Positions 44,803-51,646 of a DNA stretch of 64,000 nucleotides are shown in pieces (the stretch's first letter is position 1; every line of letters begins with the position of its first letter). This DNA is from Paramoeba atlantica (taxonomy: Eukaryota > Protista > Discosea): assembly GCA_977017575.1 (NCBI GenBank), contig CDRNVI010000074.1, positions 59,753-123,752 of the forward strand. Direction: 5' to 3'. Below the pieces are notes generated by a model. That model did no database searches and was not told where the DNA came from. It was given only the letters and a program-made list of their open reading frames with translations. The translations under genes and the position numbers were made by a program.

Positions 44803-45098
44803 ATCATACGCTCATTGGCGCAGAGATATTCCCCTTAATGCGACGGTCGATATCATCGGCACATGATCCGCCCACAACGGATGTCGCACCAAGGGGCATT
44901 TGGAACGATAACACGAGGCAGAGTCACGCACAGCGGTACTCAAGGGGAAGTCTCAAGGGAAAAAAGCTCACTCAAAGAGTGAGCCGGGGAGGGGTAATGG
45001 GAAGCGCGTCCCCTGCTTCACCGAAGAAAGAGGGGCAGTTTCGCCCTTACTGCCGGCCGGCAACGGGCATGTAACAGTAAGACTCTTCCCGGTGCCGG
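44803..45098 (+). other. Structured element X in the array spacer (X1); also from ~52237, ~59565 and ~62132
   Basis: Multiple stems that covary against the copy inside the LINE; followed directly by (GA)n. Confidence 0.7.
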
Positions 45099-45328
45099 AG
45101 AGAGAGAGAGAGAGAGAGAGAGAGAGAGAGAGAGAGAGAGAGAGAGAGAGAGAGAGAGAGAGAGAGAGAGAGAGAGAGAGAGAGAGAGAGAGAGAGAGAG
45201 AGAGAGAGAGAGAGAGAGAGAGAGAGAGAGAGAGAGAGAGAGAGAGAGAGAGAGAGAGAGAGAGAGAGAGAGAGAGAGAGAGAGAGAGAGAGAGAGAGAG
45301 AGAGAGAGAGAGAGAGAGAGAGAGAGAG
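45098..45328. repeat. (GA)n microsatellite ending each unit: ~230 bp here, ~130 bp at 52532, ~115 bp at 59860, ~55 bp at 62427
   Basis: Perfect dinucleotide runs. Confidence 0.99.
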
Positions 45329-46619
45329 GGAGATACGGAACGTAAAAAATAGGTAGCCTCAATTGTGGTCCCGGTGAGGCCCCGGAGTTGCGAGAAGCCT
45401 CCATACCCCACAACTACCACCTTCCCCCCCTATTTAGCGGGGGTCGCGCAAGCGACCCCTGATAAATGGGGGGAAGGTGGTAGTTGTTTTGGGGGAAATG
45501 AGAGGCCGAACGCACGGAGGGGCCGGCCGGGCCATTGAGTCACGTCAAAGTGTGACGCTGAGTTCGTGGGAAGCAATTTGCGAAGCCCTAGGTGATGCTC
45601 AGTTGTATTGGGCGACACCGAGACAAACCACGGAAATCCCAGATACGACAAGGTCTAGATATCATAAAGAGAGAAAAAACCGGAGCTGTAGACGCGAAAA
45701 AGAATGACAGAGATATAACAATGCGATATGCGACCGATGAGTTGAGTCGATGCGTGTGCTGACTCTACCTTCCACCGTCATTCACAGAAAATTAACAAAA
45801 AATGTATTATGACAGATAAGGGTGCAGTATGACAGATAAGGGTGCGGCTTATATGACAGATAAGGGTGCAGTATGACAGATAAGGGTGCATTATGACAGA
45901 TAAGGGTGCAGTATGACAGATAAGGGTGCATTATGACAGATAAGGGTGCAGTATGACAGATAAGGGTGCATTATGACAGATAAGGGTGCGAGTTTCTATG
46001 ACAGATAAAGGTGCGGGTGCCCCGGCTTCGAATACGCGGAACGCTTCTGACCACACCTTTGTCTGCGGGGGAAAACCTCCGAATGCGTGGGTCGATCAGT
46101 AAACGGAAATCTTCCTTAGATTGGAGCTTACGTGTGTTAGGCTATCTGTTCGATACACCGCAGCAGCAAGGTGACACCTCTCGATGCCAGAGGATTCCGC
46201 TTCCTTGGTATGCAGACGTTACATCCATCCCACCACCTGCTCCAGTAGCGTGGCACCGCACTTCCTGACGGGGAGTATGGGGATGTAAAGGCACCTATGC
46301 CATATCGATACTCCACAGAGTATCGACCGTTCAGCGACCAGGCACTTTCCTCCAAGTTTCCCTGCTTTCTCAGGGGAGGCGACATCATTGAACAAGGGTA
46401 ACCGCCTGTTTTACATACATTCATACATACAAAGGCATCTATGCGCCCTGTATTATAAAGCCGTACGTAAAAATCACAGCGTCCCGAGGACTCAATGCCG
46501 ATTCGAAACGCAACTAGGCCCTTGAGGTGAGAGAGGCAAAGACGACACTGAAGAAAATCTCGTGAAACGTCGTGAAAGGTCGTCGAAACCTCACCACCTG
46601 ATTCCTCTTGCATTTAAAA

Positions 46620-47531: not shown

Positions 47532-50500
47532 ATGAAACCATGTCGTCGTAAGCACAAGCGAGGAGGCAGAAGCCGGAAACGTCGAAAAGAGCGAGCTACC
47601 TTCTACGGCCGACAACGAAAGAGTCGTCGAAGGAATACAAACAATAGAGCTCCCATAAAATCCAAAAGTCCGCGTACCGATGATCCCGCGACTACCGAAA
47701 CTGAGAAAATATCACAGACCCCTGACAAGATTACGAGGCAAAGCAGAATCACCGTACACAAACGGCAAGCGCCAGCCAAAAAGAATGCACTTAAGAAAAC
47801 ATCGATCCGTCGTAAAAAAGGAAGAAAAGGTACTAGTCGAGCCGCCAGCCGACCAAGGAAAAAGAGTCGACCTCGAGGATTCACCGCCGGAACATATAAC
47901 GTGAGGACATGGAATGCAAAGCAACGTGACCCACAGGGAACCTGGATGGAGGGAGCTATATCAACCATTCGTATGGCGTCAATCGCTGGAATCGACCTCC
48001 TAGCCGTCCAGGAGTGCCGAATACCAGGAGTCGACAAAGTCGAAATCCCAGTTCAAAAAGGTGAAACATGGACGCTCATACACAGCGGTTGCAAGACTGG
48101 GAAACTCCAGAGAGGAGTTGGTTTCTTACTTAGTCCTAAGGCAAGTAAGGCGCTGATAAGCTTTGAAGGCGTATCAGATAGAATATTAACTGCAAGCTTT
48201 AAAATTGCCAACACCCGCAACATGTATGCAATCTCCGCATATGCGCCCACTGAAGATTCCCTATCCTGCGAAAAGAACGGTTTCTACGCAGATCTGGAGG
48301 ACGCCATGGCCAATAGACCCAACCAAGAAATTCCCCACATTTTCGGGGACTTCAACGCAGTAATAAAGAGCACCCCGCTACTGTTTCCCAACGTCGGATC
48401 AAACGCAACAGGAATCAAGACAAGTGACAACGGCCGCAGATTGGCCGAATTCTCAAAGATACATAGACTCATTTTGTCTAACACCTCACTGGAGCAGTCA
48501 AACGAAAATAGTCTCGGAGACCAAGCTTGGACCTGGAGACACCCTGCAGGGCTGACTCAGAACCAAATAGACTATATCTTAATACCTCTACATGTTCTAG
48601 GAGAAAACACAACAGTAATTTCGGAATTACCGTATGAGAGTGACCATCGCATAGTGTGTACAACACTGAGCTATCGACCGTCAACAAAGAAAAAGAACTC
48701 CCGCACTATAAATTGCATTGAACCACTGCGCGCAAACCCCTCAAAGCAGCAATTGTACCAGGAGCTAATGGGCGTAAAATTACAGCATCACTCACTGAGT
48801 GAGGATATAGAATCAGAATGGAGTGACCTAAAAATCGCTCTCTTAGAAACATCCAAGCAAGCATGCGCTAACACTTGTATCCAAACCAACCTCCCATGGA
48901 TGAATGACGAACTCTTACGAAAGATAGCAGAAAAACAAGACTCTCTATTGCGATACAAGTCGCATCATTCAACTTCTAAGGAAAAAGAGAAGGCACACCT
49001 TAATTATCGCTGCAAACGTCGAATAGCCTTTCGTTCTTTCAGGTTAGCAAAGCGTACCTACTTCGCCCAAAAGGTAAAGCAGATTGAGACTGTCAGGGCT
49101 GAGGGAAATCACCACAAGCTATTTAAACTAACAAAAGAATTGACAAAACTAACCTACCCACCAAATAACGATAAACCTGCAATTCGAAACAAAGATGAAA
49201 TGGTCTCTGACCCAGAGGCCAAAGCGCAAGCACTGGCCACTTCCTTTTCTAGGATATTTAACACACCAAACCCCCTATTTAATTTATCCAGAGTACAACA
49301 AGACCTAGAAGAACTAAAGTACCCTGCCATAGAGGACGATGTCCTTCGCATGGAAAAAGAAGAAAATAGTTATCCTCCAAACGAACTGGAAGTAGAACGC
49401 GCACTGTCTACACTAAAAAATAGGAAAGCACAAGGCCCAGACGGAATTTTCCCCGAACATCTCAAATATGCAGGAAAAGCCGCAATTATTTGGATGACAT
49501 GGATATTGAAACTTTGCTGGCAAAACTCCAAGGTTCCCAAAGAGTGGACGCACTCCCACATCATACCAATCTACAAAGGCGCAGCAAAAGGCAAAGCCTG
49601 CGATCCCGGATCCTACCGCCCAATTTCAATAATGAGCCCTGCAGCGAAAGCCCTATCTGGCATACTCACACATCGTATTGCAGCGCGCGTCGATGCTAGA
49701 CTTCTAGAAGCCCAAAATGGCTTCCGACATAATAGAGGTATAGACGATGCGATCTTCATACTCAGAAGAATCACGGAGGAAGTCAGGAGACACAAATCAC
49801 CGTTATATCTTGCCTACCTGGATCTCGAGAAGGCTTATGATACCTTACCACGAGAGGCAGTCTGGGCCACCCTTCAGAGTTTGAAAATTGAAGGACCATT
49901 ATTGGAACTAATTCGCGCACTATATAACACAACAACTGCAAGCGTCATGTTAAACGACGGCACGAAGAGTGAAAGCTTCGAAATACCTGGCGGCTTAAAA
50001 CAAGGCTGTCCAATGAGCTGCCTGCTATTCAAGGGTTATGATCATACGCTCGTGGCGCAGAGATGCGTCTCTCTGTGTGACGGCCGATACCATCGGCGCA
50101 TGACCCGCATACGACGGGTGTCACACAGAGAGTGGAGTGCGAGGTAGGAGACGAGACGCCCATCGGTCATGCTACAGCACGTATAGCCATGGTTCATGCT
50201 GCAACACGATCAAGCCGTGGGTTCATGCTGTCAGATGGTCTATCGTGGATCATGATGCATCATGGGGAGGTCCGTTACCGCCGCACTCGCTACAGCATGT
50301 AGGGAGAGAGGGGTGCAAGTTCGCATCCCCTATACACTCATACAACGTGTCCTCCCGCTGTAGCACGCCCAGTGGTCCTCAAGGGAGGCCACCATGGCGC
50401 ATAGCTCCCGGGAGAAGAAAGCACGAGAAGGAGAGAGCCGGGGAGGGAAGAAAGCTCACTCGAAGAGAGCGAGCCGGGGAGGGGTGAAGAGTGCGAAGTG

Positions 50501-51646
50501 CGTCCCCTACTTCCGCGACAAAGAGGGACAGTTTCAGCTAGCCGTCAGCCGGAAACGGGCATTTAAAAGTAAGAATACGCCCGTTTCCGGGAAAAGAAAG
50601 GAAGGGCTAGCAAAATGTACCAACAAGGTACAGAAAACAACATTTGATGCTGTACTCCGGAAAGCACTACAGATTAAAACTGCAGGCATCCGTGTCGAAT
50701 GGAGGATCCCAAAAGGAAGAGCTCAACGAGGCGATAAAGTAACCGGTACAGATGTTTTCGGACTCATAGCGTATGCGGATGACCTTGTTCTTTGGTCGGA
50801 CGAACAAACGGAACTGCAAAATACCTTAAACGCAGTAGTAGGGGTTATGAACCGATGGGGAATAAGGATAAACACAAGGAAAACTAAAACACAGGTAATT
50901 CAACCTTGCAAAGAGAAGAAACTATTGAACAAGTACGGAACTTCTCATACCTTGGAACAGTCATCAGTGAAGATGCTTCATTGGAAGAAGAAATAGAAAA
51001 CAGAATAAGAAGAGCTTGCGCAGGTATGAGAAAATTTAGAGACTTGTGGAAAGACAAGGCTATCACAAGGAAAACGAAAAGACTCATCCTGGAAGTCTGT
51101 ATAGTACCAATTCTACTATATGCGAGCTCAACGTGGGCGCTTACACCAACCCAGCATCTGAAACTCAACCGCGCCTATATAAGATACATCAAAACATCTT
51201 TCGGCATACCATGGGTCAAGAACGACAATAGCGCCTACAATGATAAACAGCACCAAGAATCTGCGAAGGATGCAATAAGATATACCTCCCAGAAGGAATG
51301 CCTATCGATCGCAGGAATGGACCCACTCCAGCCACAAATAGATGCCCGAAGTTTACTGTTTGCTGGACACGTCGCAAGAATGGGTCCAGATAGATTCCCG
51401 AACAGAGTGTTATTCGGCAAATATCGATCAACTCAAAATAGAGGAAATACATATAAACGAAGCCTGCCATGCTATAGTAGAAGCCTTGTAGCTGCACTGG
51501 AAAGAGTTGGGATAACAACAGATTGCTCATGGAAACTGAAAGCCCAGAATAAAAAAAGTTGGATAAAGATAATAGATGAATATAGAAAGAGCACGAAAAC
51601 CCAAACGTTAAACAAAGGTAATAAAAAATCATTCTCAAGGAACTAA
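47532..51646 (+). pseudogene. APE-RT ORF of LINE copy 1, interrupted and frameshifted
   Basis: APE: TYNVRT, LAVQEC, GVGFLL, SAYAPT, GDFNA, NQIDYIL, SDH. RT: SYRPISI, QNGFR, YLDLEKAYD, GLKQGCPMS, YADD, FAGHVARM. Confidence 0.85.
50031..50633. other. 603-bp structured insertion (X2) splitting RT copy 1
   Basis: Lies between codons TTC and AAA; four in-frame stops; homologous to X1; ends antisense to SL. Confidence 0.85.

What the first reader, a model, noticed from the sequence alone, without database searches (positions are those of the whole stretch)
44803..50633. Unclassified structured-RNA family X, supported by covariation between the spacer copy and the RT insert
Seen: X1 (44803-45098) and X2 (50041-50590) share ordered blocks: ATCATACGCTC..TGGCGCAGAGAT; a three-way junction; CAGYGGTMCTCAAGGG; AAAGCTCACTC..GAGCCGGGGAGGGGT; GCGTCCCCT..AAAGAGGGRCAGTTTC; a terminal hairpin; a purine tail. 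Stems differ in sequence but keep pairing: CCCCTTAATGCGAC/GTCGCACCAAGGGG versus CTCTCTGTGTGAC/GTCACACAGAGAG; ATCCG/CGGAT versus ACCCG/CGGGT; CCGGCAACGGG/CCCGGTGCCGG versus CCGGAAACGGGC/GCCCGTTTCCGG. Two changes (U-G to C-G and U-G to U-A) are tolerated only on +, which points to + as the folded strand. X2 has ~230 extra nt with further stems. I cannot match X to 7SL, U snRNAs, RNase P/MRP, group I/II introns or small ribozymes. Inference: a new mobile structured RNA (SINE-like or ribozyme-like) tied to SL loci.
Basis: partly seen in the sequence, partly recalled or inferred. Interest (0 to 1): 0.85.

Follow-up and report, generated by a model that had tools for sequence, protein, structure and literature searches.

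The report
Spliced-leader-capped structured retroposon, read backwards
The "new structured RNA" is real repeated DNA with conserved hairpins, but it is the minus-strand body of a short, non-coding retroposon of a kinetoplastid whose RNA was trans-spliced to the spliced leader before being copied back into the genome, not a ribozyme or an intron.

Summary
The strand call and the interpretation do not.

- **X2 is an insertion.** It occupies 50033-50637. Public contigs carry the same LINE without it, with TG in its place.
- **X is a dispersed repeat.** Its contig depth is about 9-40 times that of the LINE. Three further copies, 97-98% identical, lie in unrelated contexts of the same genome (L005-L007).
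- **The copied strand is minus.** On the minus strand this reads SL exon, short linker, polypyrimidine tract, body. In L005 the SL exon is joined 14 nt further in, exactly after an AG that the other copies retain. That is an alternative trans-splice acceptor.
- **The ends fit a non-LTR-type retroposon, though not a canonical SINE.** The opposite end (three-way junction plus ATCTC-hairpin-TGAT) is fixed to within a few nt. It has no poly(A), and no target duplication was found.
- **No Rfam family matches.** There is no ribozyme or intron evidence.

The partner element that mobilises X is unknown. First-stage notes on other windows of this genome describe similar SL-capped SINEs.

The parts
50033..50637 (-). 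X2, a long-form X copy (605 nt) inserted into the RT domain of LINE copy 1. On the minus strand it reads: SL exon 3' part, GTACATTTTGCTAG, polypyrimidine tract, body, three-way junction, ATCTC-hairpin-TGATCATAAC.
   Evidence: Contigs of the LINE without it join 50032 to 50638 with TG between. It is 97-98% identical to L005, L006 and L007. The LINE ORF stops inside it at 50147.
57327..57931 (-). The same X2 insertion in LINE copy 2, a duplicate made by unit amplification and not a second event.
   Evidence: It is identical to 50020-50650. The LINE-bearing units are 99.9% identical apart from a 34-nt indel.
50618..50636 (-). 5'-truncated spliced-leader head of X2: 16 nt of the SL exon 3' end plus GTA.
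   Evidence: 19/19 antisense match to SL gene 47150-47168. L005, L006 and L007 carry longer SL heads at the same place, and L005 is joined at an alternative AG acceptor.
50035..50136 (-). 3' terminal domain of X2 on the minus strand: 13-bp stem closing a three-way junction with two hairpins, then the ATC/GAT-closed 5-bp hairpin and the end ...TGATCATAAC.
   Evidence: 32 pairs, 99.4% of cells paired, 5 pairs changed on both sides, against 0-1 in the slid controls. The left boundary at 50035 is shared with an unrelated context (run X5 contig).
44799..45098 (-). X1, a short-form X copy fixed in SL/5S unit 1. Its 3' end on the minus strand is ...TGATAAAC at about 44799.
   Evidence: Covariance model R1 scores 101 bits on the minus strand.
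45099..45329 (-). (GA)n on the + strand, which is (TC)n on the minus strand: the expanded polypyrimidine tract of X1. It corresponds to CCCTTCCTTTCTTTTCC in X2.
   Evidence: Read directly; the correspondence is my inference.
52233..52532 (-). X1 copy in unit 2, just 3' of LINE copy 1 and its 12-bp target duplication.
59561..59860 (-). X1 copy in unit 3.
62128..62427 (-). X1 copy in unit 4.
23253..23340 (-). Degenerate internal fragment of a third X subfamily.
   Evidence: 89% identity to X1 over 53 nt. Contigs of the same type begin matching at 50364 (loose ends).
47503..52200 (+). APE+RT LINE copy 1, the host of X2. It has a 12-bp target duplication (atatgcatgaac) and a 34-nt deletion at 50913/50914.
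   Evidence: Pfam Exo_endo_phos and RVT_1. An empty-site contig joins 47490 to 52202.
54797..59528 (+). APE+RT LINE copy 2, also carrying X2.

Best explanation
X is a family of short (about 300 to 600 nt), non-coding, non-autonomous retroposons of a kinetoplastid. Its RNA is the minus strand of the window.

**Shown**
- The family is dispersed and multi-copy, and it is inserted into unrelated sites.
- One copy landed in the RT of an APE-type LINE. That LINE copy was then duplicated along with its SL/5S unit.
- Every long copy begins, on the minus strand, with a 5'-truncated SL exon that ends exactly at the exon's last base.
- Two different junctions exist, 14 nt apart. The inner one lies directly after an AG, so the RNA was trans-spliced before it was copied.
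- The 3' end is constant to within a few nt, has no poly(A), and consists of a three-way junction plus a small terminal hairpin. The stems of that domain kept pairing through compensatory changes between the two subfamilies.
- No target duplication was found.

**Inferred**
- The element is transcribed, probably within Pol II polycistronic transcription, and then SL-capped.
- Its structured 3' domain is recognised by the reverse transcriptase of an autonomous element. I favour a restriction-like-endonuclease (CRE/R2-type) LINE because there is no poly(A) and no target duplication.
- Reverse transcription starts at the precise 3' end and stops or jumps within the SL, which gives the variable 5' ends.
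- X1 is an old copy fixed in the SL/5S array by concerted evolution, with its polypyrimidine tract expanded to (TC)n.
For: **Insertion and mobility**
- contigs hold the LINE without X2 (join 50032>50638 with TG between; depth 136 and 211).
- X depth is 1250-5560 against 136 for the LINE body.
- a contig has the same left boundary (50035) in another context.
- three more copies lie on separate contigs of the same assembly. Pairwise identity is 97-98%.

**Strand and trans-splicing**
- the right ends are antisense SL exon of 16, 29, about 27 and 28 nt.
- L005 joins ...CCTTGTTG directly to CCCTTCC, exactly after the AG of GCTAG|CCCTTCC that the other copies retain.
- L007 has extra partial SL pieces, as expected from template jumping.

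**Ends**
- no poly(A) and no target duplication.
- 2 bp of target are lost at the LINE site.

**Structure**
- the structure is conserved on the minus strand. Of 32 pairs, 99.4% of cells are paired and 5 pairs are compensated, against 0-1 in the slid controls.

**Context**
- other retroelements in the same DNA also carry SL pieces at their 5' ends.
Against: - No partner element with a similar 3' end was found in about 150 kb. None of the three LINEs in the window resembles X.
- No strand-specific RNA data were available. The single RNA-labelled contig (run X5) is unstranded and runs into the flank.
- X1 shows no recognisable SL head.
- The polypyrimidine tract lies downstream of both acceptors, not upstream of them as is usual. 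The unspliced master copy has not been seen.
- GTA after the SL exon equals the first 3 nt of the SL intron. I treat this as chance (1 in 64).
- The covariation rests on one split between two lineages.
Confidence: 0.8

Rival explanations
1. X copies are retro-pseudogenes of a host gene for a structured, trans-spliced non-coding RNA with a cellular function. The dispersed copies would be by-products of LINE activity, not a selfish SINE.
For: The stems are conserved and compensated. An SL cap is typical of host Pol II transcripts. One copy is fixed in every SL/5S unit.
Against: Copy number is high and the copies are 97-98% identical. There are at least three subfamilies. The precise 3' end without poly(A) in every copy suggests specific recognition by an RT. 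No Rfam family matches.
Confidence: 0.1
2. One reading: X is a plus-strand structured RNA or SINE with a 3' purine tail. Its RNA ends in a sequence antisense to the SL, for example by read-through from a master copy sitting in an SL gene.
For: A hairpin followed by a simple-repeat tail is a known LINE/SINE 3' architecture. Depth rises toward the right end of X2. The plus strand folds as well as the minus strand.
Against: The variable-length SL sequence sits on that side, which is the signature of 5' truncation and not of a 3' end. L005's junction, exactly at the exon end and after an AG, has no explanation on the plus strand. The opposite end is the constant one. The depth rise comes from short-form copies cross-matching from 50364 onward (loose ends). 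The cited G.U pairs are private mutations.
Confidence: 0.05
3. X2 is an intron or self-processing RNA of the LINE, removed from the mRNA to restore the RT.
Against: The X2-free LINE exists as DNA and has TG where the insert sits, so it is not a precise excision product. No GT-AG pair keeps the frame (read). There are no group I/II or ribozyme matches. The same element sits in non-LINE sites.
Confidence: 0.01
4. X moves as DNA, for example through a tyrosine-recombinase retroelement's circular intermediate or as a hairpin-rich MITE-like element. That would explain the missing target duplications.
For: No target duplication in four copies. First-stage notes report YR retroelements with SL pieces in this genome (untested).
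Against: The 5' truncation within the SL varies between copies, and L007 has jumped SL pieces, both of which point to reverse transcription from the 3' end. X has no terminal inverted repeats.
Confidence: 0.04

Closest known systems
Non-autonomous parasites of restriction-like-endonuclease LINEs (the SIDE elements dependent on R2, as I recall them) and 'stringent' SINE/LINE pairs such as UnaSINE1/UnaL2
   Same: Short and non-coding. The 3' end is precise and carries a conserved RNA structure in place of a poly(A) tail. The 5' ends vary. There are small target deletions and no long duplications.
   Different: No partner LINE sharing the 3' domain has been found. X has no 5' ribozyme and instead carries a trans-spliced SL cap.
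Relic spliced leaders in retroposed genes of dinoflagellates (Symbiodinium retrogenes, PMC5585692; the earlier dinoflagellate work is recalled, not read here)
   Same: An SL exon is fossilised at the 5' end of retrocopies, which proves that a trans-spliced RNA was reverse-transcribed. One copy (L007) has repeated partial SL pieces.
   Different: Those are protein-coding mRNAs with poly(A) tails. X is a high-copy non-coding element without poly(A), in a kinetoplastid.
Trypanosomatid short retroposons RIME, NARTc and SIDER, which carry the Pr77 hallmark (PMC8190864, PMC4748587)
   Same: Kinetoplastid, short, non-autonomous, mobilised in trans.
   Different: Pr77 starts CCCTGGCTCAGCCGG (PMC4748587), and X has nothing like it. 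Those elements produce unspliced transcripts and, as I recall, end in poly(A) with target duplications. X is SL-capped and has neither a poly(A) tail nor duplications.
SIRE/VIPER of Trypanosoma cruzi (recalled; VIPER is reviewed in PMC6681497)
   Same: A short dispersed element of a kinetoplastid that carries trans-splicing signals and is linked to a retroelement without classical target duplications.
   Different: No sequence relation was tested. SIRE is part of VIPER's ends, whereas X has no known autonomous relative.
CRE/SLACS/CZAR clade LINEs (PMC12278014)
   Same: SL-associated, with a restriction-like endonuclease and no poly(A) dependence. X's SL heads mostly start at SL nt 10-12, close to the classical insertion point of this clade in SL genes (recalled).
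   Different: CRE elements are autonomous and sit inside SL genes. X is non-coding and inserts elsewhere. The CRE-like copy in this window shares no sequence with X.

Membership tests
SINE / non-autonomous non-LTR retroposon | Short, non-coding, dispersed in many copies | tested here: met
   Elements are 300-605 nt and contain only spurious ORFs. There are four independent contexts plus a fragment. Depth is 9-40 times that of the LINE.
SINE / non-autonomous non-LTR retroposon | Insertion shown by an empty site | tested here: met
   The LINE without X2 is present in three runs (join 50032>50638).
SINE / non-autonomous non-LTR retroposon | Head derived from tRNA, 7SL or 5S with an internal Pol III promoter | tested here: not met
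   No tRNA was found. There is no Rfam match on either strand. The head is a spliced-on SL exon.
SINE / non-autonomous non-LTR retroposon | Target-site duplications | tested here: not met
   The longest flank repeats are 4-7 nt, at chance level. 2 bp are deleted at the LINE site.
SINE / non-autonomous non-LTR retroposon | 3' end shared with a partner LINE | tested here: inconclusive
   No similarity to the three LINEs in the window. Neither the covariance model nor the motif scan found a match in about 150 kb. The rest of the genome was not searchable.
Retrocopy of a trans-spliced RNA | SL exon at the 5' end, ending exactly at the exon's last base | tested here: met
   All four independent copies end at ...CCTTGTTG.
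Retrocopy of a trans-spliced RNA | Junction at an AG acceptor that is visible in an unspliced or differently spliced copy | tested here: met
   The L005 junction lies right after the AG of GCTAG|CCCTTCC retained in the other three copies. The outer acceptor could not be checked.
Retrocopy of a trans-spliced RNA | Poly(A) tail at the 3' end | tested here: not met
   The ends are ...TGATCAYRAC followed directly by the flank in five contexts.
Self-cleaving ribozyme or group I/II intron | Match to a known catalytic RNA model | tested here: not met
   cmscan at E up to 10 on both strands gives only sub-threshold hits to unrelated bacterial sRNAs and miRNA hairpins.
Intron of the LINE | Precise removal regenerates the uninterrupted gene | tested here: not met
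   The uninterrupted LINE has TG in place of the 605 nt. No GT-AG pair keeps the frame.
Pr77-bearing trypanosomatid retroposons | 77-nt hallmark at the 5' end | tested here: not met
   The Pr77 5' primer sequence CCCTGGCTCAGCCGG (PMC4748587) is absent from X on either strand.

The most novel reading that the evidence does not exclude
The SL heads of X are not randomly truncated.

- Three of the four independent copies, and all three SL pieces in L007, begin at SL nt 10-12. That leaves the 28 nt that lie 3' of the classical CRE/SLACS cleavage point in SL genes.
- If this holds genome-wide, an SL-specific restriction-like endonuclease of a CRE-clade LINE would be trimming SL-capped RNA or cDNA while mobilising it in trans to non-SL sites.
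- That would link trans-splicing, a site-specific LINE and a structured SINE in one previously undescribed retroposition pathway.
Probability: 0.15. Interest if true: 0.7.

Novelty: new variant of a known kind. Interest (0 to 1): 0.45.

Why it matters
- **It removes a false lead.** There is no new ribozyme, intron or plus-strand RNA here.
- **It replaces that lead with a dated molecular fossil.** A non-coding RNA of a kinetoplastid was trans-spliced at two alternative acceptors and then reverse-transcribed many times.
- **The family is useful experimentally.** It gives a clean system for asking which reverse transcriptase recognises a poly(A)-less structured 3' end in these organisms. It also lets one ask how SL-capped RNAs enter retroposition, and how such insertions inactivate other mobile elements (here an SL-array LINE).
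- **It bears on trans-splicing annotation.** SL sequences found inside such genomes need not be SL genes or splice artefacts.

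Tried and rejected
- **Intron reading of X2.** Rejected by the X2-free LINE carrying TG and by the lack of any frame-keeping GT-AG pair.
- **Strand from thermodynamics.** Both strands fold equally well.
- **Strand from G.U pairs.** The informative pairs are private mutations of single copies (tables 3 and 4).
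- **Depth gradient as a sign of 5' truncation.** Confounded by short-form copies cross-matching from 50364 onward (loose ends).
- **An SL-RNA-like head upstream of the (TC)n of X1.** The alignment to the SL gene is not significant (z 1.3-2.0, controls similar). One narrower test gave 7/1000, which I do not trust.
- **Pr77/L1TcRz resemblance.** Recalled from memory and not borne out.
- **Metagenome scans for X motifs.** The first found nothing. The second found three chance matches in bacterial-looking coding DNA. The genome-contig scan for the SL found nothing.
- **Protein-space route with the X1 ORF and with LINE ORFs.** Nothing on record. The X2 ORF did work.
- **Search for a partner 3' end.** The ATCTC...TGAT motif scan and covariance model R1 found only X copies.
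- **Literature.** I found no description of SL-capped SINEs in kinetoplastids or diplonemids.

Full report
**Setting.** The right third of the window (from about 42650) is a tandem array.
- Each unit holds a 5S rRNA gene on the minus strand (Rfam) and a kinetoplastid-type spliced-leader (SL) RNA gene on the plus strand (exon ...ACAGTTTCTGTACCTTGTTG|GTATGAG).
- RNA-labelled contigs join the exon to other sequences exactly after 47165, which fixes the exon's 3' end.
- The organism is a kinetoplastid outside the trypanosomes. A locus of the same assembly encodes an REH2-type editing helicase. The ATR kinase in the window is 48% identical to Trypanosoma and 57-65% identical to unnamed ENA assemblies.
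- Two units carry an APE+RT LINE (Pfam) at one fixed site with a 12-bp target duplication. An empty-site contig exists.

**The observation.**
- X1 is identical in all four units.
- X2 is identical in both LINE copies. The units holding those copies are 99.9% identical apart from a 34-nt indel, so X2 entered once and was amplified with its unit.
- Rfam gives nothing for either strand, even at E up to 10 on short queries.

**X2 is an insertion, not an intron.** I laid the contigs of four public runs of the same organism on 47100-52535.
- A contig runs from the LINE's 5' part straight into its 3' part. It joins 50032 to 50638 with the two letters TG between, which reads ...LFNATFDAVL...
- The insert is therefore 50033-50637: 605 nt that replaced TG. 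A precise splicing product would not carry TG.
- No GT-AG pair keeps the frame, and the LINE ORF stops inside X2 at 50147.

**X is a dispersed, high-copy family.**
- Depth over X is 1250-5560 against 136 for the LINE body.
- A contig of the RNA-labelled run shows the same left boundary (50035) next to unrelated sequence.
- Contigs that start matching at 50364, and a fragment at 23253-23340, show a third subfamily.
- One spurious ORF inside X2 had three relatives in the protein collection. This led to three contigs of the organism's ENA assembly, each with a full long-form copy 97-98% identical to X2 in a different context. In L007 the copy lies between two same-strand ORFs with weak leucine-rich-repeat matches.

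**The strand.**
- Thermodynamics does not decide: z is -2.9 versus -2.95 for X1 and -4.0 versus -5.35 for X2.
Most other copies have C at 52281 and A at 52469.
- Conversely, X1's outer stem has two A.C mismatches on plus that are G.U pairs on minus.
- The ends of the four independent long copies do decide.
  - On the minus strand this is an SL exon that always ends at its last base (...CCTTGTTG). It is followed in three copies by GTACATTTTGCTAG and then CCCTTCCTTTC...
  - In L005 the SL exon is followed directly by CCCTTCC..., that is, exactly after the AG of ...GCTAG.
  - Two junctions 14 nt apart, the inner one right after an AG, are what alternative 3' splice-site use in trans-splicing produces. 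I see no plus-strand explanation for it.
I take this as a 1-in-64 coincidence.
- The opposite end is constant to within a few nt in five contexts (...GAGCGTATGATCAYRAC). It has no A-tail.
- A variable SL end with a constant other end is the pattern of reverse transcription from a defined 3' end with 5' truncation. So X is minus-sense.

**Anatomy on the minus strand (long form, about 600 nt).**
- It starts with the SL exon, truncated at its 5' end.
- A 14-nt linker and a polypyrimidine tract follow. The tract has expanded to (TC)~115 in X1.
- Next come a 12-14-bp hairpin, a 9-bp hairpin and pyrimidine-rich segments.
- A hairpin-rich middle of about 230 nt is absent from the short form.
- A 13-bp stem then closes a three-way junction with two hairpins.
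- The element ends with ATC-UC-[5-bp hairpin]-U-GAU and the last 4-6 nt.
- In the 3' domain, 32 pairs are 99.4% paired across five sequences, with five pairs changed on both sides between X1-type and X2-type. The slid controls give 0-1. All these changes separate just two lineages, so the support is real but thin.

**Mechanism.**
- Shown: trans-splicing before copying, the retroposed strand, insertion into unrelated sites, recent activity, and a conserved 3' structure.
- Inferred: an RT supplied in trans recognises the 3' domain and starts at the precise 3' end. I favour a restriction-like-endonuclease LINE, because there is no poly(A), no target duplication was found, and 2 bp of target were lost at the LINE site.
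- Such LINEs exist here. The window holds a CRE-like element and an RT-CCHC-PD..E..K fragment at 40516-42135.
- None of them shares sequence or 3' structure with X, so the partner is unknown.

**An unexplained regularity.**
- Three of the four SL heads, and all three pieces in L007, begin at SL nt 10-12.
- As I recall, that is the point where CRE/SLACS/CZAR elements cut trypanosomatid SL genes. PMC12278014 confirms only that the clade inserts at one fixed SL position.
- With four copies this is only suggestive.

**Relation to earlier notes of this scan.**
- First-stage notes on this window had seen the 603-nt in-frame insert, its antisense-SL end, the LINE's SL-like 5' end and the 12-bp duplication. 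I confirm these facts and reinterpret the first two.
- Notes on other windows of the same genome describe SINE-like elements capped by an SL joined at a trans-splice AG, and a 3' signature ATCTC-[stem-loop]-TGA. X fits both descriptions.
- The scan has therefore very probably met this kind of element before on other DNA. Those notes are unchecked, and I could not compare sequences.

**Verdict.** The structured, Rfam-unclassified family is real and mobile, but it was read on the wrong strand. It is best filed as a new variant of a known kind: a non-autonomous retroposon whose RNA is SL-capped and poly(A)-less, with a structured 3' recognition domain. I found no published description of such an element in kinetoplastids or diplonemids, though that search was limited.

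Noticed in passing
L005:10473-10510, L006:10438-10465, L007:10447-10510 (minus strand): The SL heads of the X copies start at SL nt 10-12 in three of four independent copies. L007 has three tandem partial SL pieces, each starting at ATAAAG and separated by CTC or TACTCATC. This looks like template jumping.
   Followed up: partly
window 51832-52013, and 11520-11620: Part of the LINE 3' UTR has 5-10 times the depth of the LINE body in all DNA runs. Its motif TGAAGCTGAGA(C/G)TCAA recurs next to the CRE-like element. It is probably another short repeat family sharing this module.
   Followed up: no
window 50913/50914: LINE copy 1 lacks 34 nt that the public contigs and copy 2 have. This shifts its frame, so copy 1 is broken twice (X2 plus this deletion).
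   Followed up: partly
window 45391-45508 (and the same place in each unit): A long, near-perfect hairpin of about 40 bp sits in every SL/5S unit between the (GA)n and the 17-nt tandem repeats. It drew only sub-threshold miRNA-model hits.
   Followed up: no
window 45806-46010 and 42388-42540: Tandem 20-21-nt repeats (ATGACAGATAAGGGTGC core) occur in each unit. An inverted block of the same repeats sits at the left edge of the array.
   Followed up: no
window 40368-42135 (minus strand): A fragment of a restriction-like-endonuclease LINE (RT C-terminus, CCHC, PD..E..K) borders the SL array. Its roughly 150-nt 3' UTR contains ATCTC...TGA motifs and ends in A9.
   Followed up: partly
window 5187-5210; L006:6182-6195: SL exon pieces that stop near nt 21-22 (…GATACA/G) sit at the 5' end of a CRE-like element and inside a LINE-related region. 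This is a different kind of SL association from the spliced cap on X.
   Followed up: no
L007:9334-11681: The X copy lies between two same-strand ORFs (213 and 435 aa) that both give weak leucine-rich-repeat matches. It may have split one gene, in the gene's own orientation.
   Followed up: partly
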